Shown here: in pieces, positions 365 through 44,071 of the stretch | Position numbering within the stretch: the stretch's first letter is position 1 | How the letters are laid out: every line of letters begins with the position of its first letter | Virus record (IMG/VR): IMGVR_UViG_3300030419_004471 | Location: 149,602 to 213,601 of that record | DNA length: 64,000 nucleotides | Strand: one strand, 5' to 3' | The notes under the pieces: model-generated | What the model was told of the DNA's origin: nothing | Seen by the model: the letters and a program-made list of their open reading frames with translations, nothing else | Databases searched by the model: none | Translations under genes and position numbers: made by a program

Positions 365-421
365 AATCTCTTTTATTTGTTATATATAAGTATATATAAA
401 TATAAGAAAATTATAAAAACA

Positions 422-15683: not shown

Positions 15684-15814
15684 AATTTACTCCTTTTAAG
15701 TGTTAATATAATTTTAAATTTTACAGTTTAGTTTGAGATGCGTTTCTTACATCCGGTGTATATATAAATATAACAAACTTCCAAAAACCACCGATATTTT
15801 TAGAGTTTTTTTAA

Positions 15815-34164: not shown

Positions 34165-35859
34165 TTATCCACTTGTATTATATGTTAAAGGTGTAAACCC
34201 ATATAAATTTTCTCTTCTTTCAGTATTTCTTCTTTGTTCTAAAAACTTCATTGTTATTGAAACTTCTACTAAATGTGGTAATTTGTATCCTTTTTCTACT
34301 GTTGGTACATTTTTTACACCAGCTTTTTCAAAAAATGCAGCACTTGATTCATATTCTTTAACTTGTTCTGTAGTTCCATCTAACTGCCAATTAGAATTAT
34401 CAGGAACAGTATATTGTAATGATTCAATAAAAGCTTCTCTCTTTTTATATAAATCACCTAAAGTAAAATATAAAAGTGGTGCTCTTACTGAACCAATTGA
34501 AGATTGATAACCTGATTTAATATCTGGATTACCTAATGGATATGTTAAAGATGTTAAAAATCCAATCTTACTCCAATTATTAAGTAATTCTTTTGAATTC
34601 ATTGGATATATTGTAAAATTAAAAGTAACACTTCTTTCTACACCATCATATGTGTAAAAATTAAATGGGTTACCACTAAATTTAGCTCCTGCCCAAGATG
34701 GAGATACCGTTTCTGAAAGTCCTGTAATAGTTCCTCTGAAGTTTACAGTTTCATCAGTAACAACACTTTGAAATTTTAATGGTACAAAATCCCAGTCATC
34801 TATTGATTTATTATTAATTTTTAAATCTTCTGAAGTATAGATTCCAGTTTGATTTATTGCATCATCTGTGTTTGTAAATCCTTTATCAGAAATTAATTTG
34901 TTTCCTAACTCATCCTTCTCAGTACTGAATTTATTTTCTTCATTAAACTTTACTGAATCAACATTTGTTTTTATATTAACACCTTCTGCTCCATCTTTTG
35001 TTACTTGTTTACCAAGAGCGTCTTTCCCAGTAACTTGTACATATCCTTTTCCAACTCTTAAAGCAGCTAATTGGGCTTCAGGTGTTTCGTATTTGATGTA
35101 AGTACTACTTTTTTCATCTATATTTAATTTATTTTCTAATGCTTTTTCTGAATATGTAGTACCTGTTACACTTTCAAAAATACCAGGTGATGGTTTTGTC
35201 TCTTTTTCCTTATATGGTTCTTTTTTACCAAATCTACTTTTTAAATTATTTTTAAAACTACTATCATTAAATAATGTATCTCTAAGTGTATCCTTTGCTT
35301 CTTTTAGTAATTTACCAGCTGCTTGTTGAGCAATTGTCTTTGGAGTTCCACCACTTAATAGTCCACCAATAAAACTTCCTTGTGCACCTCTTTTTATTTT
35401 TATTAGTCTTTCTTCATAACCTGATTGAACACCAAGCGTTGGGTCATTTAGTGTACCACCACGACCAAATTTATCACTAGCTTTTGTTACTGCATCATTA
35501 GCAAGTTTTGCTAATCCTTTTAATTCATCACCATCACCACCACCAGCTTTTTTTGTATATGAACTTGGTATAAGAGTTTGAGGTACACCTAATGTAGAGT
35601 TAACTACAGTTCTTAGATTTTTTATCGTACCACCAATTAAACCACCATCACCTTCATCGGTACGCATCTTATCCATATCAGGTGTTGAACGAAGAGCTAT
35701 ACGAGTAGCTTCGTTGCCATATATTAATGGATTGTTAAGTTCTACTGCAGATTTTACTCTAACACCAGTAAGTTCTTGCTCAACACCAGTCAATCTATCT
35801 GGTTTTACTTGTTTATCTAATCCTGCTCCCCTAAATAATTCTAATATTGTTCTTCCCAT
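34165..35859 (-). CDS. tail tube initiator / baseplate protein (gp48/gp54-like C-terminal domain)
   Basis: FRGTITGLSETVSPSW...YTYDGVERSVTFNF; located between TMP and LysM genes. Confidence 0.65.
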   Translation of the reverse strand: MGRTILELFRGAGLDKQVKPDRLTGVEQELTGVRVKSAVELNNPLIYGNEATRIALRSTPDMDKMRTDEGDGGLIGGTIKNLRTVVNSTLGVPQTLIPSSYTKKAGGGDGDELKGLAKLANDAVTKASDKFGRGGTLNDPTLGVQSGYEERLIKIKRGAQGSFIGGLLSGGTPKTIAQQAAGKLLKEAKDTLRDTLFNDSSFKNNLKSRFGKKEPYKEKETKPSPGIFESVTGTTYSEKALENKLNIDEKSSTYIKYETPEAQLAALRVGKGYVQVTGKDALGKQVTKDGAEGVNIKTNVDSVKFNEENKFSTEKDELGNKLISDKGFTNTDDAINQTGIYTSEDLKINNKSIDDWDFVPLKFQSVVTDETVNFRGTITGLSETVSPSWAGAKFSGNPFNFYTYDGVERSVTFNFTIYPMNSKELLNNWSKIGFLTSLTYPLGNPDIKSGYQSSIGSVRAPLLYFTLGDLYKKREAFIESLQYTVPDNSNWQLDGTTEQVKEYESSAAFFEKAGVKNVPTVEKGYKLPHLVEVSITMKFLEQRRNTERRENLYGFTPLTYNTSG

Positions 35860-37961
35860 TATTCTCGTTCTCCGTAATTGTTAGATTGGCTTCTTGATAC
35901 TACTTTAGAAACCCCGTCTGTAACTTTTTTACCATCCATATTTACAACAACCTGTAAATTTCTAATATCTTCACCTAAAGTATTTATAGCTGCTACTACT
36001 GCTCTATTATCTCCACCACCTCCACCTCTATTACCAAATAAACCACCAAATAAACCTGGAGCTGCTACTAAATCATCATTATCCGATAATTGGAACAATC
36101 CTCCTTCTTTAGTAGATACTTGTGTTTTACCATCAGCAGGAGATGCCATATCACCAGCTTCACCATATAGTTTACTAAATCCAGTTCCTATAATAGCGGC
36201 TGCTGTAGCAGCACCCAAAATCGGTCCTACTATTGGTATCCAAGCTAATGCACCATATGCTGCATATGCAGCCATTAATATCATAGCTGCTGCCACCAAT
36301 TTTATCATTCCCGCAAAAGGGCCTAAAGCATCTGCCCATCCTCTAATATAGTCTGCAACAGTTCCAACCATAGTAATCATCGAAGTAAAAAAACCTACTA
36401 TACCACTAACAACCCACATTACTCCTTCTAAAGCTGGCATAACACCTTCCATTATTGGTGCAAATGCCAATACTAATTGAGTACCTATTTCTGAAAATGA
36501 GTTCGCTACATTATCTAATACTGATTGCATTTCTTTTTGGTCTTTAATTTTTTGTGTTTGATTTGCTAAATCAGTTTTTGAAATATTATTTAAATCTTTA
36601 CCAGAAGCGATAAGTGCATCATAAGCAGCTTGTTGGTCTGCATTCATTTTACCAAACTTTTGCCTTACATTAAGTTGATTTTGTATTTCACTAAACTCCA
36701 TACCAGCAGCTTCAGCTAATTTCTGCTTTTGGAAGTAATTTAAATTATCTAAATCAATTGTACCTTGTATTTGGTCTAATACTGCTTGTTGTGATTTAAC
36801 TATATCACCAGTAGCTGCTAATTCTCTAGCTCTGTTAAAATTAACTGATTGTCCTAACATAGCAGATGCTTCTAATTCAGCGTTAATACTATTATTAAAA
36901 TCTAATAATCCTTCTGCTACTTTAGATGCCTGACCTATTGATGTTCCTAATCTTGCTGCTTGAACTGCTGCTTTGGTTAAATCTTGTACTGAACCTGAGA
37001 AATGCATTGCTGCTGCTTCTGAGTTTTCAGCTATATCTTTTATTACTTTTGATGGAGCTACTCCAGCAGCTGCAGCTAATTGTGTAGTAAATTCAACTTG
37101 ATATTGTGCAGCTTCGGCAGATAATCCTCCTAATTGTTGGAATATAGAATTTAATTTTGCTCCATCTGCAGCTGCTACTCCGAAGTTCTTTTCCAATGCA
37201 ACTGTACTTTCTAATACTTCTTTTGATGGTTTTCCTATTCCTTCAAATTCATTAATAAATGCTGCAGCTGCCTTACCCACATCTTCCATTGATGCACCTA
37301 AACCTGCCGTACCTTTTGTTACTGCAGCTATATCACCTTTTAATCCTTTAGTTTGGGAGTTTAATAAACCTGTTTCTTCTCTAACTGCCTTTGCAGCTCC
37401 TTCTAATTTTTGAAACCCAACAAAAGCTAATGCTAATGCCGCGAGTAATCCCATAGCAATAAACATAGGTCCTAATTTTGCAAGCATACCTGACATTGAT
37501 TTTAATGAAGCAGTTCCTCCTGCTACACCAGCTCGAAAAGATTTGAAGAATCCAGCCCCTCCTTTTTGTGCAGCTTGAAATGATGATGTAAATCTACTAC
37601 TGAATCTATGTGCAGCTACATCAAATACTCTACCTGCTTTTGCTGCAAATGGGTCAAATACTTTTCCTAATGATGTACCAATTACTGGAACATCTTTTAC
37701 CATATCGCCTATTTTTTCTAATCCAGCTTTGAATCCTTCTGCTGTTTCTTTTGCTTTTTTATTTACAGATGTTAATACTGCATTTTGTTGTTTAGTTGCT
37801 TTAAGAGCTGCTCTAAGGGCTTTAGCTTTTTCTATTTGATTTTTCTTAACGGCACCACTAGTTTTTTCTATAATTTTCTCACTTGCTAAAATTTCAGCAT
37901 TAAGTGAAGAAATCTGTTTTAAGTTTTCTATTTGCCCTATGTAGTCTTGTTCTCTTGCCAT
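35859..37961 (-). CDS. tape measure protein
   Basis: 700 aa, Ala/Gly-rich helical, hydrophobic C-terminal stretches; downstream of tube and chaperone. Confidence 0.85.
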   Translation of the reverse strand: MAREQDYIGQIENLKQISSLNAEILASEKIIEKTSGAVKKNQIEKAKALRAALKATKQQNAVLTSVNKKAKETAEGFKAGLEKIGDMVKDVPVIGTSLGKVFDPFAAKAGRVFDVAAHRFSSRFTSSFQAAQKGGAGFFKSFRAGVAGGTASLKSMSGMLAKLGPMFIAMGLLAALALAFVGFQKLEGAAKAVREETGLLNSQTKGLKGDIAAVTKGTAGLGASMEDVGKAAAAFINEFEGIGKPSKEVLESTVALEKNFGVAAADGAKLNSIFQQLGGLSAEAAQYQVEFTTQLAAAAGVAPSKVIKDIAENSEAAAMHFSGSVQDLTKAAVQAARLGTSIGQASKVAEGLLDFNNSINAELEASAMLGQSVNFNRARELAATGDIVKSQQAVLDQIQGTIDLDNLNYFQKQKLAEAAGMEFSEIQNQLNVRQKFGKMNADQQAAYDALIASGKDLNNISKTDLANQTQKIKDQKEMQSVLDNVANSFSEIGTQLVLAFAPIMEGVMPALEGVMWVVSGIVGFFTSMITMVGTVADYIRGWADALGPFAGMIKLVAAAMILMAAYAAYGALAWIPIVGPILGAATAAAIIGTGFSKLYGEAGDMASPADGKTQVSTKEGGLFQLSDNDDLVAAPGLFGGLFGNRGGGGGDNRAVVAAINTLGEDIRNLQVVVNMDGKKVTDGVSKVVSRSQSNNYGERE

Positions 37962-37974
37962 AGTTAGCTATTAC

Positions 37975-38235
37975 TTATTTTATTCCAAATTGTTTCATAG
38001 CTTTTGCTAACGCTGGAGATGGTTTTAAACCTTTGGCTTTCATCTTAGCGGTTGCTTTTTTTAAATCATCTAAAGCTTTATCACCATCTGCTAAAGCTTG
38101 TTGAAGTGATTTATCTTTAGCCAATACTTTTTGAATTTTTCTTTTGAAAAAATTAACTAAAAATCCTTCTCTTTTTAGATTGTGTTTTTTAACAATATTA
38201 GAGAATAGTATCTTATCGTTTTCGTTTATTTTCAT
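37975..38235 (-). CDS. small basic hypothetical protein (MKINE...)
   Basis: Own late-type motif (38269) and AGGAG; very Lys-rich. Confidence 0.75.
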   Translation of the reverse strand: MKINENDKILFSNIVKKHNLKREGFLVNFFKRKIQKVLAKDKSLQQALADGDKALDDLKKATAKMKAKGLKPSPALAKAMKQFGIK

Positions 38236-38282
38236 AGTTTTTCTCCTTTGTGGGTATTTTTATACAACTATAAATATAAAGT

Positions 38283-38312
38283 AAAAAAAAAGTGAGGAAT
38301 TATCTCCTCACT
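38283..38312 (-). terminator. intrinsic terminator after the GT chaperone
   Basis: 8-bp stem AGTGAGGA/TCCTCACT (38291-38312) followed by a U run on the minus strand. Confidence 0.8.
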
Positions 38313-38536
38313 CTTATGTTTGGTTTTCTGACATTTGGTGATGATTTTTTCATCGCCTTATCATGCTCTTCTTTCTCTTTTTTCTTTGCCTCTCCAAGTT
38401 TTTTATAATGAAACATTCTAATATGAACAGGCATTTGATACACATCATTAAATGTGAAACCATTTCCATAGTAGCACATTTCAAATATTTGATTATGTAG
38501 TTGAGATGAGTAGTTACTCGGTAGGGTAAAAAAACC
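38300..38536 (-). CDS. frameshifted T segment of the tail assembly chaperone (GT fusion)
   Basis: Open frame starts right after a TAG at the GGG-T7 run and reads GFFTLPSNYSSQLHNQIFEMCYYGNGF...RVRR; first ATG is about 20 codons in. Confidence 0.75.
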   Translation of the reverse strand, partial: GFFTLPSNYSSQLHNQIFEMCYYGNGFTFNDVYQMPVHIRMFHYKKLGEAKKKEKEEHDKAMKKSSPNVRKPNIRVRR

Positions 38537-39281
38537 CTATCCCCAAAGGGATAATCATCTCCTCTTTCTCTCCTGTTTCGATATCTTCGTGCTCAAACTT
38601 CATATTCATATCTGGTTGGAGTTCCATAATATGATTTCTAAAAGCTCTAGTATCTCGTGATAAAAATTTATTATTAATAAAGTTATTAATTGATTTGGTA
38701 TCTTCTTTTCCATCTACAGATTGAATCATATATCTGTATCTTGTTGTAAGCTCAGCGGATACACCACCTTTATTTAATCTATCCATAGCTTTAACATCAA
38801 TATCGATTTTCTTCTCATCACCGTGTGAAAGTAATTTAAATTTTATTATATTTTTACCTATAGGAGTTACCCACTCATATAAGTTTTCTCTACTAAGTTT
38901 AGATAAATCTACATCTTTTGTTTGAATTTTTGCTAAATCAATATTAACATCTTCCTTATCACCATATTTGTTGGTAATTTCTGCTTTATATTCAGGCCCA
39001 TAACCCAAAATACGAGTTGCTAATACTATTGCGTTTTTATCTCCAAGAAGTATATCATCTGGATTTATTCCTTTATCAACTATTATTGATTCGAATAATT
39101 TATCTAATACTACACCTTTTTTAATTAAGTTTTGAGAAGCAAGTATTTCTTCTTCTTTTGCTGTCATATACTTGATTTCTACTTGTCCTTTTGCTAATGG
39201 GTGTTTTTCGGGATAACATTTTCCCTCTGAAGGTAACGATATGATTTCTGTAGGAAAATCATACTTTTTCTTTTCTGCCAT
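38514..39281 (-). CDS. tail assembly chaperone G (T4 gp26-like)
   Basis: Between tube and TMP; LPSEG..Y, YMTAKEEEIL, GDKNAI...RILGYG; ends in IGFFYPTE across a T7 run. Confidence 0.75.
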   Translation of the reverse strand: MAEKKKYDFPTEIISLPSEGKCYPEKHPLAKGQVEIKYMTAKEEEILASQNLIKKGVVLDKLFESIIVDKGINPDDILLGDKNAIVLATRILGYGPEYKAEITNKYGDKEDVNIDLAKIQTKDVDLSKLSRENLYEWVTPIGKNIIKFKLLSHGDEKKIDIDVKAMDRLNKGGVSAELTTRYRYMIQSVDGKEDTKSINNFINNKFLSRDTRAFRNHIMELQPDMNMKFEHEDIETGEKEEMIIPLGIGFFYPTE

Positions 39282-39343
39282 AATTTTTCTCTTATTGGTT
39301 TGTATATAAATATATAACTTTCAAAAAGTTGGAAAAAAAGCAT

Positions 39344-39378
39344 AAAAAAAGTTCTCACATAGAGAACTTTCTTTTTTT
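39344..39378. terminator. intrinsic (possibly bidirectional) terminator after the tail tube gene
   Basis: AAAGTTCTC-acata-GAGAACTTT hairpin flanked by A and T runs. Confidence 0.75.
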
Positions 39379-39393
39379 AAATATATTTTAGTA

Positions 39394-39882
39394 TTAGAAT
39401 TCTAAGATTGCGTAATCATAAGATAACGTCAATGTGATTTCAGCTGGGTCATTAGAAGCCCAATCTAAATCATTAAATGCAGCAGATGTAATAAATGCAC
39501 CTTTTAGTGTCCATTGTTCAATTTTATCACCAACTGGCCCTAACATATAGAAATTTACATCTTTCTTATAGAAATCTGCGTATCCATCTCTACCCGTTAA
39601 AGATTCGTGTGATGTTCTAACCCATTCCATCACTTGTTGTGCTCCTGAAGGAACGATAGGGTCATATAGAGTAATCTCTACATCTTGCCATTCACCTTTA
39701 CCTTTTAGTTTTCTCTTAACGTTAATATGGTCTAACGTTACAGGTTCAAACTGAATAGTAGGTCTGTTGGCTGTTTTTATTAAATATGAGTCTATACCAT
39801 CAATGTTCATAATGAACCTGTTCTTCATCTTCGGTTCGAAGTTGGTATAAAACATTTCGTTGAATTCTAATACTTCTGCCAT
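39394..39882 (-). CDS. tail tube protein (gp19-like)
   Basis: EPKMKNRF, W.D...TLYD, V..W.LKGAF, LTLSYDYA. Confidence 0.9.
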   Translation of the reverse strand: MAEVLEFNEMFYTNFEPKMKNRFIMNIDGIDSYLIKTANRPTIQFEPVTLDHINVKRKLKGKGEWQDVEITLYDPIVPSGAQQVMEWVRTSHESLTGRDGYADFYKKDVNFYMLGPVGDKIEQWTLKGAFITSAAFNDLDWASNDPAEITLTLSYDYAILEF

Positions 39883-39932
39883 TTTAATTTTCTCCTATTA
39901 TATAATATAAATATATAGTTTTTAAATTTTCA

Positions 39933-42311
39933 TTATGCTGAGAACGAAGCCCCTGTCGGTAGAATGTTGAAATCAATTACTATGAATTCAGCTGTCTTAG
40001 TAGGTTGTAAAAATATTTGTCCTGCTAAGATGTTTCTATCGATTACATCAGGAGTGTTGTTTGTTTCATCCATCACCACTTTGAATGCGTATAACCCTTG
40101 TCTTTGCTGTACACCTTCTAAATATGGTTGTACAGTGTTTATAAATCTATTTCTAGTCTGTGCCGTATTTTGTTCAAAGATTAAGTATCTTGAAGTACTT
40201 GCTACAAACTTTTTAACTTTAATCAATAATCTTCTTACATTAATTCTATCTAATGCTGAAGCTTTATCTTGTAATGTTTTTTGTCCGAATGCTACGATTC
40301 CTTCTCCAGGGAACGATGCGATTGGATTAACCTTACCTTCATAAAGTGTATCTCTTTCAGCGTGCGTTAATCTGTTCATTACAGAAACTGCTCCTACAAT
40401 TCCACCTCTGTTTAATCCAGCAGGTGCGAACCATTCGGCTGCTATTCTATCGTTAGCTGCGTAAATACCTGGCATCAATACTGATGGTGGTACTGCAGTT
40501 AATTTGTTAGTATTAATATCGATTGTTTTAACCCAAGGATAATAAGTACCAACATAGTTAGAATCTACTGCATCTGCTTGAGTTGTTGCTTGTGCTATAG
40601 TATCACTATGTGCGGTTGTATCTCCAATGAAGAAACAATCTGCTCTATCTTCACAAGTATCAACAATTTTATCAAACACATAAGAGTGTAATCTACGAAT
40701 AACACCTGGTGCTGATACTAAATTAATATCGAAATCATCAGGGTTAGAAATTGCGTTGATTGCTTTAACATATGCAACTGAACCACTACTTGTCGAATTT
40801 GTTAAGTTAAATCCTTGAGAGTTACCTGCTGTTATATCTGAACCAAGTTTCTTTCTTATCGTTGGAGAAACTCCATCGTATCCACTTTGGAACATTACAG
40901 TAAACTGTCTCTTAGCGATATCAACTGCTGCTGAACCTGTCATCTCATATGAGTATGAATGAGTACTACCGTCTATCTGAACACTTGTATCAAATGCAAA
41001 TACTCCGTTAGAACCTGTTCCTGCTGATTGAGGAATCGGTGCAACATAGTTTTTGTTATCAATCTTAATTGTAGCTGATTCTATATCCATACCAGCGTAT
41101 TTAACTTTTGAACTAGCCGTATTTGAATCAGAACCTGTACTGAATATTACTGCAGGTACTAAATCTTCTTCTGCTGAAGTAGCTGTACCACTAATATTAA
41201 TTGGGTTTTGATATTCACCGTGTCCAAATGGTGCTGATGTTATTGGGAATGCTCCTTCTGCTACACACTCAACATAAATATAATCAGAGTAATTTGCATA
41301 ATCTCCAGTTTCAGTTTGTTTACCATCTGAATCGATTGTTATGTATCTATCACCAATTACTTTTTTAATGTATTGAGGTGAAGCTGGGTCTAAGTTAACA
41401 TTATTAAATGTTTCTAAAACATTCTTTCTTTTATCAGTATCACTAAATTTTCTAACTGCTATAGAGAACGTTGCATAATCTGTAGATGCGTTGCTTCCTG
41501 CAGGTTTAACATTAAATACTGAGATTTTATATGCTTGGTTCGTATCAGTACCATGCGATATAGTATGGAATCTAAATAAGTTATGTCTTTGACCTGATAT
41601 TAATTGTGATTTAATATAAGGTGTGGTTGCTCTCTGAGTATCAACATTAAAGTCTTGGTCTGCTAATGATAAAAACTCAACTGATGAACCACTATTAATA
41701 AAGTAATCTACTTGATTCGTAGCGTTGTTTTCAAAATATTTGTAAACATATGCGTTTTTGCTTCCAAGCGGTGATTCCCCAAATAAATCTCTGATGTCAC
41801 TACCAGATGCTGGGATTACCGATGCGGATACTGCTGTTCCTAATTGTGAACCACTAATATTAAAAGTAGAAGAAGATAACTGACATTCAATTGTGTTAGT
41901 AGCTGATGGGAATCCAGTTCCTTCAGTTCCATTTTCAGTTGCAAATAGTGTACCTACTAATGTTCTAGCTCCAGCACTACCTGTAGTAGCTGCTGCATCT
42001 CTAGAACCAGATACTACGATACCTACTGGGTCAACCATAGTATATCCACCTAAGTGTCCTACTTTAACAATTGTTACAGTTCCTGCTTCTCTTAAATAGT
42101 TTTGTACGGTATATCCTGTATAGTATGTTCCATCAGGTACACCGAAAATTTCTTCAAATTCTGATTGGGTATTTACGATTGTTGGTACGAATGCAGGTCC
42201 TTTTTTGAAAGGTCCTATAATTGCGGCACCAATCTCACCTATTCCTTGCGAAATAAATGATAAATCATTTTCTCTTGTAAATACGCCAGGTGATACGATT
42301 TTTTCTGCCAT
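39933..42311 (-). CDS. tail sheath protein (gp18-like)
   Basis: SPGVFTRE, YYPWV, WFAPAGLNRG, NPIASFPG, GQKTLQ, RINVRRL. Confidence 0.95.
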   Translation of the reverse strand: MAEKIVSPGVFTRENDLSFISQGIGEIGAAIIGPFKKGPAFVPTIVNTQSEFEEIFGVPDGTYYTGYTVQNYLREAGTVTIVKVGHLGGYTMVDPVGIVVSGSRDAAATTGSAGARTLVGTLFATENGTEGTGFPSATNTIECQLSSSTFNISGSQLGTAVSASVIPASGSDIRDLFGESPLGSKNAYVYKYFENNATNQVDYFINSGSSVEFLSLADQDFNVDTQRATTPYIKSQLISGQRHNLFRFHTISHGTDTNQAYKISVFNVKPAGSNASTDYATFSIAVRKFSDTDKRKNVLETFNNVNLDPASPQYIKKVIGDRYITIDSDGKQTETGDYANYSDYIYVECVAEGAFPITSAPFGHGEYQNPINISGTATSAEEDLVPAVIFSTGSDSNTASSKVKYAGMDIESATIKIDNKNYVAPIPQSAGTGSNGVFAFDTSVQIDGSTHSYSYEMTGSAAVDIAKRQFTVMFQSGYDGVSPTIRKKLGSDITAGNSQGFNLTNSTSSGSVAYVKAINAISNPDDFDINLVSAPGVIRRLHSYVFDKIVDTCEDRADCFFIGDTTAHSDTIAQATTQADAVDSNYVGTYYPWVKTIDINTNKLTAVPPSVLMPGIYAANDRIAAEWFAPAGLNRGGIVGAVSVMNRLTHAERDTLYEGKVNPIASFPGEGIVAFGQKTLQDKASALDRINVRRLLIKVKKFVASTSRYLIFEQNTAQTRNRFINTVQPYLEGVQQRQGLYAFKVVMDETNNTPDVIDRNILAGQIFLQPTKTAEFIVIDFNILPTGASFSA

Positions 42312-42675: not shown

Positions 42676-42754
42676 TTTTGTAAAATTTAATGTAACATTA
42701 TTATATATATAAATATATAGTTTTTTTCAAAACGAAATATTTTTTTGTAGATTC

Positions 42755-44071
42755 TTATGAACTTATAGTAAAGGTCAAAGTTGCACTCCAGTCACTAGCT
42801 AAACCTTGGTCATAAGCTCTTACTCTAAGATATCTAGTTCCTGTTCCTATACCACTTATACCACTAACACTACTAATACTAGTTGCAACATGCCCAGTTA
42901 CATTAGCTATTGTTGAACCAAAATCATTATTATCATCAATTTGGTAATCATATGCGGTAATTCCGCCTGTACCCGTTGATGATGGTGCTGTCCAACTAAG
43001 AACATCTGTTCCTGAATTATATGCTAATGATGATGGTGCATCTGGTGCGGTTAAATCAGTATGGGAATTCCCACCTTTATTGTGAGTAACATATCCATTT
43101 ACTAAATAAGTATCTTGTACTTCTACATCTAAAGATACTATTTCTATTTCATCAGTATCTATTGTTATTGAAGTAATTTCTTTTTCTGTTAATACATCTC
43201 TTATCTCTTGAATTAAATAATCTCCGATTTCTAATCTTACTAATTCTTTAAATCTGTATTTTCCATCCGATTTATCTTTTACTAACATTGGGTGTTCGGA
43301 TGTACCTTTTACTTCACCATTATTAATGTTGTATATTTTATTACTAAAAGAGTAAGTTACATTTACTACTTTTACATTTTTTTGAGTTTCTCCAATTGTA
43401 TCAGATTCCCATTCTAAAAAATCACCATCTGAATCTTCTGATAATCCAGCTAATGCATATCCTTTTAATTCATCACCTTCATTTAAATCTCCAACCTCAA
43501 CTACATTTCCATCTGCTTTTGTTATAGGTGAATCAGATACTAAACATAATGCAGCTGCATTACCATCATATGAATCTACGGAATATATTGTTTTTGTAAC
43601 TGCAGTATTATATTTGTTTCCTGAACCTAAATGGTCATTAAATCCATCAGCGAATTTTACTTGAAGTGTATGTGCTTGAGCTCCAACTAATTGAGTTTGA
43701 GTTGCTGCATTTGTCATATTTCCAGCAGTAATAGTTATAGAACCACTACCAGCTGCAGCTGCATCATATGATGCTGATGTGAAATATGTAGTTCCAGCTG
43801 AAGTTATTGTCCAATCATAATTTTTCTTTTGGTCTTTTATTTTTTTAAATCGTCCACCTTCATTACTAAATGTTACAGTATAATCTTCTGCTGTACTTTC
43901 AACTACATAAGTATATCCACTTATTGAACTCACTGCATCTATAGAAAATGCTGACATTGATATTGGAGTTGCTGTACTACCAGCACAAGTACCCAATGAT
44001 TTGGTACTTTCATCACAAGCCGTTGCTAAACTATTTAGTGAGAGTGTATTTCCTGCTGCTAATGTTGCCAT
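42755..44071 (-). CDS. virion-type protein with Hint (intein-like) domain and C-terminal fibronectin type III domain
   Basis: Hint from C176 (CLVSD, 43546) through TSEH to HN (43079); FN3 PDAP...SWTAP...Y...VRA. Confidence 0.85.
   Translation of the reverse strand: MATLAAGNTLSLNSLATACDESTKSLGTCAGSTATPISMSAFSIDAVSSISGYTYVVESTAEDYTVTFSNEGGRFKKIKDQKKNYDWTITSAGTTYFTSASYDAAAAGSGSITITAGNMTNAATQTQLVGAQAHTLQVKFADGFNDHLGSGNKYNTAVTKTIYSVDSYDGNAAALCLVSDSPITKADGNVVEVGDLNEGDELKGYALAGLSEDSDGDFLEWESDTIGETQKNVKVVNVTYSFSNKIYNINNGEVKGTSEHPMLVKDKSDGKYRFKELVRLEIGDYLIQEIRDVLTEKEITSITIDTDEIEIVSLDVEVQDTYLVNGYVTHNKGGNSHTDLTAPDAPSSLAYNSGTDVLSWTAPSSTGTGGITAYDYQIDDNNDFGSTIANVTGHVATSISSVSGISGIGTGTRYLRVRAYDQGLASDWSATLTFTISS

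What the first reader, a model, noticed from the sequence alone, without database searches (positions are those of the whole stretch)
38300..39281. Programmed +1 (or -2) frameshift in the tail assembly chaperone, not the usual -1
G ends ...GGG TTT TTT TAC CCT ACC GAG TAA (T7 run at 38528-38534). The +1 frame is closed by TAG immediately before the run (38537-38539), then stays open for a further 75 aa after the run (TLPSNYSSQLHNQIFEMCYYGNGF...RVRR) to 38300, followed by a terminator. It has no ATG for about 20 codons. tRNA-Phe can re-pair on UUU in either direction. This fits the lambda G/GT arrangement between tube and tape measure but with +1/-2 geometry, giving a ~326-327-aa fusion missed by ORF callers.
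Basis: partly seen in the sequence, partly recalled or inferred. Interest (0 to 1): 0.7.

Follow-up and report, generated by a model that had tools for sequence, protein, structure and literature searches.

The report
Forward-shifting tail chaperone gene
A marine giant phage most likely makes the long form of its tail-assembly chaperone by slipping one base forward (not the usual one base back) on a run of seven U's, a signal conserved in about 155 related phages; this shows how relatives of phage T4, long listed as the exception to this rule, make the two forms.

Summary
The minus-strand ORF 39281..38514 (255 aa) ends GGG TTT TTT TAC CCT ACC GAG TAA. The +1 frame is closed by TAG just before the T7 run, then stays open for 75 more codons to 38300, followed by a terminator.

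The gene lies between the tube gene and a tape-measure-like gene. It belongs to the T4 gp26/gp51 family (PF12322, phrog_150).

Across 157 unique related loci, the conserved downstream domain ("T") is in the +1 frame in 155 and in the -1 frame in 2.
- All 155 keep TTT followed by T or C. 139 have T7 and 11 have only TTC TTT TGG.
- The next Pro codon is CCT in 143/147, as the +1-frame Leu requires.
- No conserved start codon exists in the T frame.
- One relative has two genes: G alone without a slip site, and G fused to T in frame.
- T4 does the same with gp26 and gp51.

A hairpin directly 5' of the run is selected across the family.

Best explanation: a ribosomal +1 shift of tRNA-Phe at UUU_U, probably stimulated by the hairpin. 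Main rival: hairpin-assisted loss of one U during transcription.

This is a new variant of the known G/GT chaperone system. No relative's record that I checked annotates it.

The parts
38514..39281 (-). G (TAC-N): 255-aa ORF of the T4 gp26/gp51 family, frame 0, including the stop TAA 38516..38514
   Evidence: ORF list. phrog_150 'baseplate hub' E 2.5e-7. 7/10 aligned relatives hit PF12322, best E 1.5e-28. AF2 model pLDDT 89.7. BFVD matches to 'baseplate hub subunit / hub assembly' proteins, TM up to 0.84.
38528..38534 (-). Slip site: U7 run (frame 0: GGG UUU UUU UAC). The proposed shift codon is the second UUU (38531..38529), followed by U.
   Evidence: All 155 unique +1 loci keep TTT_Y, and 139 have T7. 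The Phe codons are TTT far more often than elsewhere in the same ORFs.
38537..38554 (-). Hairpin directly 5' of the run (UUAUCCC-UUUG-GGGAUAG), 2 nt before U7. Its 3' arm holds the +1-frame TAG.
   Evidence: Flagged as terminator-like. MFE -8.4 kcal/mol against a mean of -2.8 for synonymous recodings, 0/60 as stable. The family-wide excess of structure is confined to this position.
38300..38536 (-). T (TAC-C) extension in the +1 frame: 78 codons (GFF + 75) plus the stop TAA 38302..38300. It overlaps the last 23 nt of G.
   Evidence: AF2 gives three helices, pLDDT 81. The T profile matches the C-terminus of the naturally fused L176 gene, hhalign 99.6 %, E 1.8e-24.
38523..38525 (-). Dual-coding Pro codon CCT. 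Its CT plus the next base give the conserved +1-frame Leu (CTA).
   Evidence: CCT in 143/147 loci against 29 % CCT among other Pro codons. The +1 frame reads Leu in 148/155.
38288..38315 (-). Intrinsic-terminator-like hairpin plus T9 ending the G-T unit
   Evidence: 12 pairs, 4 GC, then TTTTTACTTT.
39305..39314 (-). TATATTTATA motif upstream of G, a possible late promoter
   Evidence: 8 copies in the window, all on the minus strand, against 1.46 expected. Copies also lie upstream of the sheath, the tube and the 86-aa ORF.
39344..39374 (-). Terminator-like hairpin after the tube gene, upstream boundary of the G-T unit
   Evidence: 13 pairs.
39394..39882 (-). Tail tube protein (T4 gp19-like), 162 aa
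   Evidence: PF06841 E 1.4e-9; phrog_4542 E 2.2e-31.
39933..42311 (-). Tail sheath protein, 792 aa
   Evidence: phrog_23 E 4.4e-66; PF04984 and PF17482.
37975..38235 (-). Small ORF (86 aa) of unknown function between T and the tape measure. An ORF of similar size sits at this place in relatives.
35859..37961 (-). Tape-measure-like protein, 700 aa
   Evidence: BLASTP E 2e-13 to the annotated tape measure protein of Flavobacterium phage immuto, and synteny.

Best explanation
Most ribosomes translating the 255-aa gene stop at TAA 38516..38514 and release G, the short chaperone form (TAC-N). A minority shift one base forward on GGG UUU UUU UAC. Peptidyl-tRNA-Phe on the second UUU re-pairs with the overlapping UUU, made of the codon's last two U's and the U of UAC. 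The next codon read is then ACC. These ribosomes continue for 75 more codons and make a 326-aa G-T fusion, the long form (TAC-NC), with the junction ...GIGFF-TLPSNYSSQLHNQIF...

The hairpin directly 5' of the run probably stimulates the forward shift, in the way the internal Shine-Dalgarno duplex does in prfB. By analogy with lambda G/GT and T4 gp26/gp51, the two forms act together on the tape measure protein and the tube to build a tail of the right length.

Shown here: the anatomy; its conservation; the dual-coding overlap; the absence of a conserved start; a natural in-frame fusion; and the selected hairpin.

Inferred: that the shift is ribosomal, its efficiency, and the binding partners.
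For: **1. Frame.** T is in the +1 frame in 155 of 157 unique loci from two samples of IMG/VR and phage records.

**2. Site.**
- All 155 keep TTT followed by a pyrimidine (151 TTT_T, 4 TTT_C).
- 11 loci have only TTC TTT TGG. Others have TTT CTT, TTT CTA, TTT TTT CAC and TTC TTT CGT. tRNA-Phe can re-pair +1 on all of these. It cannot re-pair -2 on TTC TTT, and a run of 3-4 T is a poor substrate for polymerase stuttering.
- The literature describes UUU_Ynn as especially prone to +1 shifting in bacteria without a stop codon. Influenza PA-X uses UCC_UUU_CGU (Atkins et al. 2016, PMC5009743).

**3. Nucleotide-level selection.**
- At the two motif codons, 3 TTC among 173 Phe codons against 24 % TTC elsewhere in the same ORFs (P 2.7e-17).
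- The first Phe codon is TTT in 141/153 against 75 % (P 7e-8).
- The Pro codon is CCT in 143/147 against 29 %.
- These P values are not corrected for relatedness.

**4. Bounds.** The tightest bounds across loci confine the shift to six codons around the run. In the window itself the bound is 23 nt.

**5. Translation ahead of any start.** The +1 peptide is conserved from the run onward (FF.L..Y..LH..IFE). The ATG at index 18 occurs in only 42/87 loci, and 6 have none.

**6. The fusion product is real.**
- L176 has G alone (TTT ATG TGG, no slip site, no T ORF after it) followed by a second gene with G (E 2e-34) and T (E 2.7e-24) in one frame. Its junction is VFGISS....
- T4 gp26 and gp51 are both PF12322, and gp51 has the extra tail.

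**7. No fusion in the frameshift-type genes.** None of 150 mutually <50 %-identical family representatives carries T in frame, so the split is maintained.

**8. Hairpin.**
- The 27 nt 5' of the run fold at -5.70 kcal/mol against -3.41 for synonymous recodings. 47 % of loci are in their own top tenth.
- Eight control offsets show nothing.
- An upstream hairpin juxtaposed to the E site stimulates +1 frameshifting on 70S ribosomes (Huang, Cho & Chang 2018, PMC6321510).

**9. The -1 relatives.** Both carry the canonical ribosomal heptamer T_TTT_TTC. This suggests the family solves the problem at the ribosome.
Against: - There is no direct evidence: no peptide and no RNA reads across the site. No RNA run holding the stretch was listed.
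- No consistent 'hungry' frame-0 A-site codon is evident (TGG 101, TAC 46, TAT 4, others 4). No tRNA abundance data exist for the unknown host.
- T7 is conserved beyond what UUU_U alone requires.
- A hairpin followed by a U tract is also the geometry of terminators and of hairpin-driven polymerase slippage.
- RNAalifold finds no positionally conserved structure. The hairpin signal is statistical, and its P values ignore phylogeny.
- The predicted complex of T with the tube protein gave no answer.
Confidence: 0.58

Rival explanations
1. Transcriptional recoding. RNA polymerase, destabilised by the nascent hairpin that forms directly 5' of the U run, realigns forward on the A7 template and makes a minority of mRNAs with U6. 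Ordinary translation of those mRNAs gives the same 326-aa G-T fusion.
For: - A hairpin followed 2 nt later by U7 is scored as an intrinsic-terminator-like site.
- The hairpin is selected family-wide, and only at this position.
- T7 is kept in 139/155 loci although UUU_U would suffice. The first Phe codon is biased to TTT.
[quoted passage not shown] 2015, as described in PMC5009743).
- A one-base deletion gives exactly the +1 frame. That would explain why +1, and not the usual -1, is fixed.
Against: - 16 loci have runs of only 3-4 T, or runs interrupted by C. Without context, slippage is undetectable even at T5C5, and it is efficient only at about 9 A/T.
- The two -1 relatives need an insertion, and they carry a canonical ribosomal heptamer.
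- The stems are modest. In the window the base of the stem is A-U-rich, unlike typical terminators.
- The same hairpin geometry is documented as a stimulator of ribosomal +1 shifting.
Confidence: 0.25
2. A ribosomal -2 shift on the U7 run. tRNA-Phe slips back two bases, giving a 327-aa fusion with an extra Phe (GIGFFF-TLPS...).
For: In the window, and in the 139 T7 loci, re-pairing two bases back is perfect. The frame reached is the same.
Against: - In TTC TTT TGG (11 loci), TTC TTT CGT and TTT CTA TTC, -2 re-pairing fails while +1 works.
- -2 shifts are rare, and in the known cases they depend on special stimulators (PMC5009743).
- The natural fusion in L176 has a single aromatic residue before G-I-S-S. 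This is not decisive.
Confidence: 0.05
3. There is no recoding. T is made on its own from the ATG at 38479 (MCYYGNGF..., 59 aa), or it is not expressed at all.
For: Gene callers list the 59-aa ORF. In one side branch (L177) an ATG with a weak purine-rich stretch precedes the T frame.
Against: - That Met lies inside the conserved core and is Leu or Ile in other loci. It is present in 42/87, and 6 loci have no ATG.
- There is no Shine-Dalgarno-like sequence before it, unlike the neighbouring genes.
- The +1 peptide is conserved upstream of it, right up to the run. The overlap is dual-coding.
- The natural in-frame fusion begins T at the junction.
Confidence: 0.04
4. Sequencing or assembly error in the homopolymer, or a decaying gene. 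The true sequence would have G and T in one frame.
For: Homopolymers are error-prone in some sequencing chemistries.
Against: - Independent assemblies from other studies agree, with no indel.
- 155 unique loci from different metagenomes and four cultured phages show the same frame relation.
- 143 of 150 family representatives end 1-7 residues after the FFx motif.
Confidence: 0.01

Closest known systems
Lambda G/GT-type tail assembly chaperones with programmed frameshift (Levin et al. 1993; Xu, Hendrix & Duda 2004; summarised in PMC5009743)
   Same: - Two overlapping ORFs lie between the tail tube gene and the tape measure gene.
- The short product comes from normal termination, and the long product from a shift a few codons before the stop.
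- The second ORF has no start of its own.
- The arrangement is conserved despite sequence divergence.
   Different: - The direction is +1 on UUU_U, not -1 on an X_XXY_YYZ heptamer.
- There is no detectable sequence similarity to gpG.
- G is large (255 aa, a two-lobed alpha/beta fold). Fold matches to solved chaperones are only weak (HK97 2ob9 Z 4.2, YqbN 3klu Z 5.2).
- The stimulator candidate is a 5' hairpin.
T4 gp26 / gp51 pair, PF12322 (proposed T4-type chaperones: Vladimirov, Gautam & Davidson 2022, Virology 566:9; paper not held, known here through PMC10274946 and PMC12846349)
   Same: - Same protein family.
- gp26 ends right after the same E-F-F motif.
- gp51 is the same domain plus a C-terminal tail that corresponds to T.
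   Different: - T4 and the relative L176 encode the short and long forms as two paralogous genes and need no recoding.
- The window's phage and about 155 relatives encode both in one gene with a +1 shift.
- The window's G has lost the two CxxC pairs that most members carry.
+1 frameshifting at UUU_Y (E. coli argI, Fu & Parker 1994; proposed for Yersinia YopN-TyeA; influenza A PA-X UCC_UUU_CGU), per PMC5009743
   Same: - The same tetranucleotide, with no stop codon needed.
- Streptococcus phage GXN1 has TTC TTT CGT, close to the PA-X cassette.
   Different: - Here it is embedded in a longer U run in most members and paired with a 5' hairpin.
- It is used for a phage assembly chaperone.
Other +1 shifts in phage structural genes: Listeria phages PSA/A118/A500 (CCC_UGA, ACA_CCC); haloarchaeal myovirus HSTV-2 chaperone 'very likely +1' (PMC5009743)
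   Same: The forward direction, in tail or capsid genes of tailed viruses.
   Different: - Those use Pro codons next to a stop codon or a pseudoknot. Here the site is Phe UUU_U with a sense codon following.
- The HSTV-2 case is a single prediction, not a conserved family.
Hairpin-dependent transcriptional slippage of Roseiflexus IS630 (Penno et al. 2015, via PMC5009743)
   Same: A stem-loop 5'-adjacent to a slippery run, and a required one-base deletion (equivalent to the +1 frame).
   Different: - The motif is U7, and U3-U4 in some relatives, not T5C5.
- There is no transcript evidence here.
- The gene is a phage late structural gene, not a transposase.

Membership tests
G/GT-type frameshifted tail assembly chaperone | Gene lies between the major tail/tube gene and the tape measure gene | tested here: met
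   Order: sheath, tube (PF06841), G, T, 86-aa ORF, 700-aa tape-measure-like ORF. The same order holds in Mel-JY01, immuto and SP-15.
G/GT-type frameshifted tail assembly chaperone | A second ORF overlaps the 3' end of the first in another frame and lacks its own conserved start | tested here: met
   23-nt overlap. The +1 frame is closed by TAG just before the run. ATG occurs in only 42/87 relatives, and none in 6.
G/GT-type frameshifted tail assembly chaperone | A conserved slippery sequence lies a few codons before the stop of the first ORF | tested here: met
   TTT_Y in 155/155 unique +1 loci, T7 in 139, lying 3-7 codons before the stop.
G/GT-type frameshifted tail assembly chaperone | -1 shift on an X_XXY_YYZ heptamer | tested here: not met
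   In the window T is in the +1 frame. Only 2 of 157 relatives are -1, with T_TTT_TTC.
G/GT-type frameshifted tail assembly chaperone | Both the short and the fused long protein are made, at a fixed ratio | not testable with these tools
   No proteomic or RNA data. The indirect support is a natural in-frame fusion next to a G-only gene in L176.
G/GT-type frameshifted tail assembly chaperone | The G part binds the tape measure and the T part binds the tube protein | tested here: inconclusive
   Complex prediction of tube plus T returned 'no answer', score 0.00. This is not evidence either way.
G/GT-type frameshifted tail assembly chaperone | Fold related to solved tail assembly chaperones | tested here: inconclusive
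   Foldseek against PDB found nothing, best E 0.14. VIA-align gave 3fgx Z 6.6, YqbN 3klu Z 5.2 and HK97 chaperone 2ob9 Z 4.2. All are below the level the tool calls reliable.
PF12322 T4_baseplate (T4 gp26/gp51) | Sequence match to the family profile | tested here: met
   - The window's G misses Pfam at E 0.01 but hits phrog_150 at E 2.5e-7.
- 7/10 aligned relatives hit PF12322, best E 1.5e-28.
- hhalign of the family alignment against T4 gp26 gives E 5e-5, aligned through the terminal FF.
- T4 gp26 and gp51 both belong to PF12322 and phrog_150.
PF12322 T4_baseplate (T4 gp26/gp51) | Shared fold with annotated baseplate hub / hub assembly proteins | tested here: met
   61 BFVD matches at E < 1e-3. 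SP-15 'baseplate hub subunit' TM 0.84, and 'baseplate hub assembly protein, T4-like' TM 0.73.
PF12322 T4_baseplate (T4 gp26/gp51) | Two CxxC pairs (zinc-ribbon-like) | tested here: not met
   Present in most relatives. Replaced in the window by NKYGDKED and TGEKEE.
+1 ribosomal frameshift at UUU_Y | UUU codon followed by a pyrimidine, allowing tRNA-Phe to re-pair +1 | tested here: met
   Window UUU_UUU_U. Family: 151 TTT_T and 4 TTT_C.
+1 ribosomal frameshift at UUU_Y | A slowly decoded frame-0 codon in the A site | tested here: inconclusive
   The following codon is TGG 101, TAC 46, TAT 4, others 4. The host and its tRNA pool are unknown, and the window has no tRNA genes.
+1 ribosomal frameshift at UUU_Y | A 5' stimulator (SD-like duplex or hairpin next to the E site) | tested here: met
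   Position-specific excess of structure against synonymous recodings. Window hairpin -8.4 kcal/mol. Precedent on 70S ribosomes.
Hairpin-dependent transcriptional slippage | A nascent-RNA stem-loop directly 5' of the slippage motif | tested here: met
   The hairpin at 38554..38537 ends 2 nt before U7. In most loci its 3' end lies 0-7 nt from the slip codon.
Hairpin-dependent transcriptional slippage | A motif long enough for the RNA-DNA hybrid to realign | tested here: inconclusive
   T7 in the window and in 139 loci, but only T3-T4 or C-interrupted runs in 16 loci.
Hairpin-dependent transcriptional slippage | A fraction of transcripts lacks one nucleotide | not testable with these tools
   No RNA run holding the site was listed. 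One RNA-library contig covers only 39113..39281.

The most novel reading that the evidence does not exclude
The T4-type tail chaperone family (gp26/gp51, thousands of clusters in marine and other myoviruses) ancestrally makes its long form through a dedicated forward-recoding cassette: a hairpin abutting a U run. That cassette would work at the level of RNA polymerase, by hairpin-driven loss of one U. This would be the first such case in a phage structural gene. The T4 two-gene solution would then be a later escape from recoding. Alternatively, the same cassette would define a new, widespread class of hairpin-stimulated UUU_U +1 ribosomal frameshift signal.
Probability: 0.25. Interest if true: 0.75.

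Novelty: new variant of a known kind. Interest (0 to 1): 0.58.

Why it matters
- **The 'T4 exception'.** A standard review says that tail chaperone frameshifting is nearly universal in long-tailed phages 'except T4'. This locus and its roughly 155 relatives show that the T4-type chaperone family does use recoding in most of its members. It does so forwards (+1) on UUU_U rather than backwards. T4 itself, and at least one other lineage, replaced recoding by gene duplication (a short gene plus a fused long gene).

- **Annotation.** Gene callers and annotators miss the fusion. None of the four cultured relatives' records joins the two ORFs. Existing predictors perform poorly on forward shifts (PMC10274946). 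So thousands of phage genomes likely carry a mis-annotated 'hypothetical protein' here.

- **A natural test set.** The family offers many variants for dissecting +1 signals. Run lengths are 3, 4, 6 and 7. The site is UUU_U or UUU_C. 110 different 5' hairpins occur. There are two -1 revertants and a no-recoding control.

Tried and rejected
- **Conserved downstream or surrounding RNA structure.** RNAalifold on 43 diverse junctions (-45..+105) gave 0 pairs. Single-sequence folds downstream showed nothing consistent.
- **Sequence search of the G profile against PDB.** Nothing.
- **Foldseek of the G model against PDB.** Nothing significant.
- **Complex prediction, tube plus T domain.** 'No answer'. 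Not used as evidence.
- **RNA evidence.** No RNA run holding the site was listed. The three metatranscriptome runs offered have no contig across the run.
- **hhalign of the G and T profiles against the single T4 gp51 sequence.** Not significant. The link to gp51 was made instead through Pfam/PHROG profiles and the fused L176 gene.
- **prfB-like internal Shine-Dalgarno stimulator.** The window has AGGG 3 nt before the slip codon, but the codon there varies across the family (GGG, GAC, AAC, GAG, TCA). A GGAGG about 25 nt upstream is common but too far away, and it encodes the conserved G-E-x-E. Rejected as the general stimulator.
- **First structure job.** I rebuilt the alignments only from the window and loci fetched by the search for related loci.
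- **The Vladimirov et al. 2022 paper.** It is not held. Its content is known here only through two citing papers.
Full report
**Observation.** On the minus strand, the ORF 39281..38514 (255 aa, called "G" here) ends ATC CCT TTG GGG ATA GGG TTT TTT TAC CCT ACC GAG TAA. The run of seven T is 38534..38528. In the +1 frame a TAG (38539..38537) lies directly before the run. After it, that frame stays open for 78 codons (GFF TLPSNYSSQLHNQIFEMCYYGNGF...RVRR) down to TAA 38302..38300. A hairpin plus T9 terminator follows at 38315..38288. The first ATG of that frame is at 38479, and no Shine-Dalgarno-like sequence precedes it, unlike the neighbouring genes.

Contigs from independent metagenome studies cross the run without any insertion or deletion. 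The only nearby difference, 38513 G>A, is synonymous in the +1 frame.

**Context.** The window is part of a complete 213.6-kb virus record, and runs holding the stretch are marine or seawater metagenomes. Upstream of G lie a 792-aa tail sheath gene and a 162-aa T4 gp19-like tube gene. Downstream lie an 86-aa ORF and a 700-aa ORF. The 700-aa ORF shares a core with the annotated tape measure protein of Flavobacterium phage immuto, E 2e-13. G therefore sits where tail assembly chaperone genes sit.

**What G is.**
- G hits phrog_150 'baseplate hub' at E 2.5e-7.
- Seven of ten aligned relatives hit Pfam PF12322 (T4_baseplate), best E 1.5e-28.
- The family alignment aligns with T4 gp26 right through gp26's C-terminal E-F-F.
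- The AlphaFold model is confident (pLDDT 89.7). It matches predicted viral 'baseplate hub subunit' and 'hub assembly' proteins at TM 0.6-0.84.
- It matches no solved structure convincingly. A Foldseek-independent search puts 3fgx (Z 6.6), the prophage protein YqbN (Z 5.2) and the HK97 tail assembly chaperone (Z 4.2) on top. I treat this as suggestive only.
- The family is large: 5,874 clusters at 50 % identity.

**Comparative test of the frame relation.** I collected loci from annotated phage records and two IMG/VR scans. In each locus I located G and the downstream domain ("T") with profile HMMs. Of 157 unique loci, T is in the +1 frame in 155 and in the -1 frame in 2. Four cultured phages share the +1 layout: Microcystis phage Mel-JY01, Flavobacterium phage immuto, Bacillus phage SP-15 and Streptococcus phage GXN1. 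None of their records joins the two ORFs.

**The site.** All 155 unique +1 loci keep TTT followed by a pyrimidine: 151 TTT_T and 4 TTT_C. Of these, 139 have the full T7, and 11 have TTC TTT TGG. Single loci have TTT CTT TGG, TTT CTA TTC, TTT TTT CAC and TTC TTT CGT.

Three counts show selection at the nucleotide level. None of the P values is corrected for relatedness.
- The two motif Phe codons include 3 TTC among 173, against 24 % TTC elsewhere in the same ORFs (P 2.7e-17).
- The first Phe codon is TTT in 141/153 against 75 % (P 7e-8).
- The Pro codon two positions on is CCT in 143/147 against 29 %. The +1 frame needs this to read Leu, which it does in 148/155 loci.

So both frames are read across the overlap. 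Combining the tightest limits across loci confines the shift to six codons around the run. The +1 frame opens 2 codons before the slip codon in 32 loci, and frame 0 ends 3 sense codons after it in 19 loci.

**Independent initiation is not the family mechanism.** The +1 peptide is conserved from the run onward (FF.L..Y..LH..IFE). Six loci have no ATG at all.

**The fusion is real.** One relative (L176) has no slip site in G. It reads TCA TTT ATG TGG, has no T ORF in any frame after it, and ends ...SFMWPNVS. A second family gene follows it, in which a diverged G domain (E 2e-34) and the T domain (E 2.7e-24) are in one frame. The T profile aligns to that protein at 99.6 % probability, starting at the junction residue (VFGISS... 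against FFGLSS...).

T4 does the same.
- gp26 (208 aa) and gp51 (249 aa) are both PF12322, and gp51 has an extra tail of about 48 residues.
- In phrog_150, gp26 and the G-only gene stop near position 235, while gp51 and the fused gene run on to position 280.
- The gp51 tail resembles T weakly (E 0.005). Three T-domain members hit phrog_634, which matches the C-terminal part of gp51 (residues 147-246).

This agrees with how two citing papers summarise Vladimirov, Gautam & Davidson 2022, which I could not read. Conversely, none of the 150 best family representatives, all mutually <50 % identical, has T in frame. 143 of them end 1-7 residues after the FFx motif. The split is therefore maintained, as expected if a fixed ratio of short to long form matters.

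**A stimulator candidate.** The terminator scan flagged a hairpin (UUAUCCC-UUUG-GGGAUAG, 38554..38537) that ends 2 nt before the U7 run. Pro and Gly codons pair with each other by nature, so I compared each locus with synonymous recodings that keep the peptide.
- The 27 nt 5' of the run fold at a mean of -5.70 kcal/mol against -3.41 for the recodings.
- 47 % of loci fall in their own most stable tenth.
- For the window the values are -8.4 against -2.8, and none of 60 recodings was as stable.
- Eight control offsets further upstream show no such excess, with 5-15 % of loci in the top tenth.
- The hairpins differ in sequence (110 distinct). In most loci they end 0-7 nt before the slip codon.
- RNAalifold sees no positionally conserved pairs.

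**Mechanism.** UUU_Ynn is known to be especially prone to +1 shifting in bacteria without a stop codon, and influenza PA-X uses UCC_UUU_CGU (PMC5009743). An upstream hairpin juxtaposed to the E site stimulates +1 shifting on 70S ribosomes, mimicking the prfB internal SD duplex (PMC6321510). The loci with only TTC TTT T or TTT C allow +1 re-pairing of tRNA-Phe but not -2, and they are poor substrates for polymerase stuttering. The two -1 relatives carry the canonical ribosomal heptamer T_TTT_TTC. I therefore favour a ribosomal +1 shift at the second UUU, confidence about 0.58.

The main rival, at about 0.25, is hairpin-assisted forward realignment of RNA polymerase. It would yield U6 transcripts, as in Roseiflexus IS630. 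In its favour: the hairpin plus U-tract geometry is terminator-like, T7 is conserved beyond what UUU_U needs, and a one-base deletion gives exactly the +1 frame. Protein sequencing cannot separate these two models. Transcript sequencing can. The -2 shift, independent initiation and sequencing error are all unlikely (see rivals).

**Not obtained.**
- A prediction of T bound to the tube protein gave no answer.
- No RNA run holding the site was listed.

**Comparison and novelty.** Functionally this is the lambda G/GT system. By descent it is the T4 gp26/gp51 family. It differs from the classical system in three ways: direction (+1), slip site (UUU_U) and the likely 5' hairpin stimulator. It differs from T4 in using one recoded gene instead of two genes.

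A standard review lists T4 as the exception to G-T frameshifting and cites only one 'very likely +1' chaperone case, HSTV-2. A later paper says poly-T signals in TAC-N genes of T4-like phages are known, calling them -1 signals. So part of this is probably in the literature. I rate it a new variant of a known kind, of moderate to good interest. The family-wide +1 rule, the dual-coding overlap, the selected hairpin and the natural no-recoding control are, as far as I could check, not described.

Noticed in passing
window 395-404, 1294-1303, 15763-15772, 38269-38278, 39305-39314, 39906-39915, 42708-42717, 62177-62186 (all minus strand): The motif TATATTTATA occurs 8 times, always on the minus strand, against 1.46 expected by chance. 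It sits just upstream of the sheath, tube, G and 86-aa ORFs. It looks like a late-promoter motif; from memory, T4 late promoters are TATAAATA.
   Followed up: partly
window 39344-39374 and 38288-38315 (minus strand): Terminator-like hairpins bracket the G-T unit, each followed by the promoter-like motif of the next gene. These tail genes therefore look like separate small transcription units, perhaps to set their very different dosages.
   Followed up: partly
window 38514-39281 (G), residues about 104-111 and 234-240: Most family members carry two CxxC pairs (zinc-ribbon-like, hitting several Zn-ribbon Pfam families weakly). The window's copy and its close relatives have lost all four cysteines (NKYGDKED, TGEKEE).
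   Followed up: partly
L011 (LR756511.1, uncultured 595-kb phage) and L094 (IMGVR_UViG_3300047160_013445): Two related megaphage-type loci have T in the -1 frame behind a canonical T_TTT_TTC heptamer (GGT/AGT TTT TTC TTC CCA) and a long frame-0 tail. The direction of recoding has switched within one protein family.
   Followed up: partly
L176 1201-2055 and 2076-3002: A two-gene arrangement: G alone without a slip site, followed by a diverged G fused in frame to T. This parallels T4 genes 26 and 51.
   Followed up: yes
L174 about 1300-1390; L177 about 1570-1665: In a small subgroup the canonical position has degenerated (ATC TTA TAT; CTT TTC TAT), yet T is still in the +1 frame. Both loci keep TTT CGT about 15 codons before the stop. 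L174's +1 frame encodes its own 'LLDIDTSFF...' strand. L177 has an ATG in the T frame. The mechanism there is unresolved: an upstream UUU_C shift, a CUU_U shift or separate initiation.
   Followed up: partly
window 37975-38235 (minus strand): An 86-aa ORF of unknown function, with a strong Shine-Dalgarno sequence, lies between T and the tape measure gene. ORFs of similar size sit at this place in Mel-JY01, L174 and L177. It has no family match.
   Followed up: no
window 42755-44071 (minus strand, 438 aa): Weak sub-threshold matches to intein splicing and HINT domains (E 0.004-0.008, below Pfam cut-offs) in the ORF upstream of the sheath gene.
   Followed up: no
alignment A2 columns about 13-20 (window about 38560-38575): A GGAGG-like purine stretch about 25 nt upstream of the run is common in the family. 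It encodes the conserved G-E-x-E of the degenerate zinc ribbon. It lies too far upstream for a prfB-like effect on the slip codon.
   Followed up: partly
window 1-64000: ARAGORN finds no tRNA or tmRNA genes in this 64-kb part of the jumbo phage genome.
   Followed up: yes
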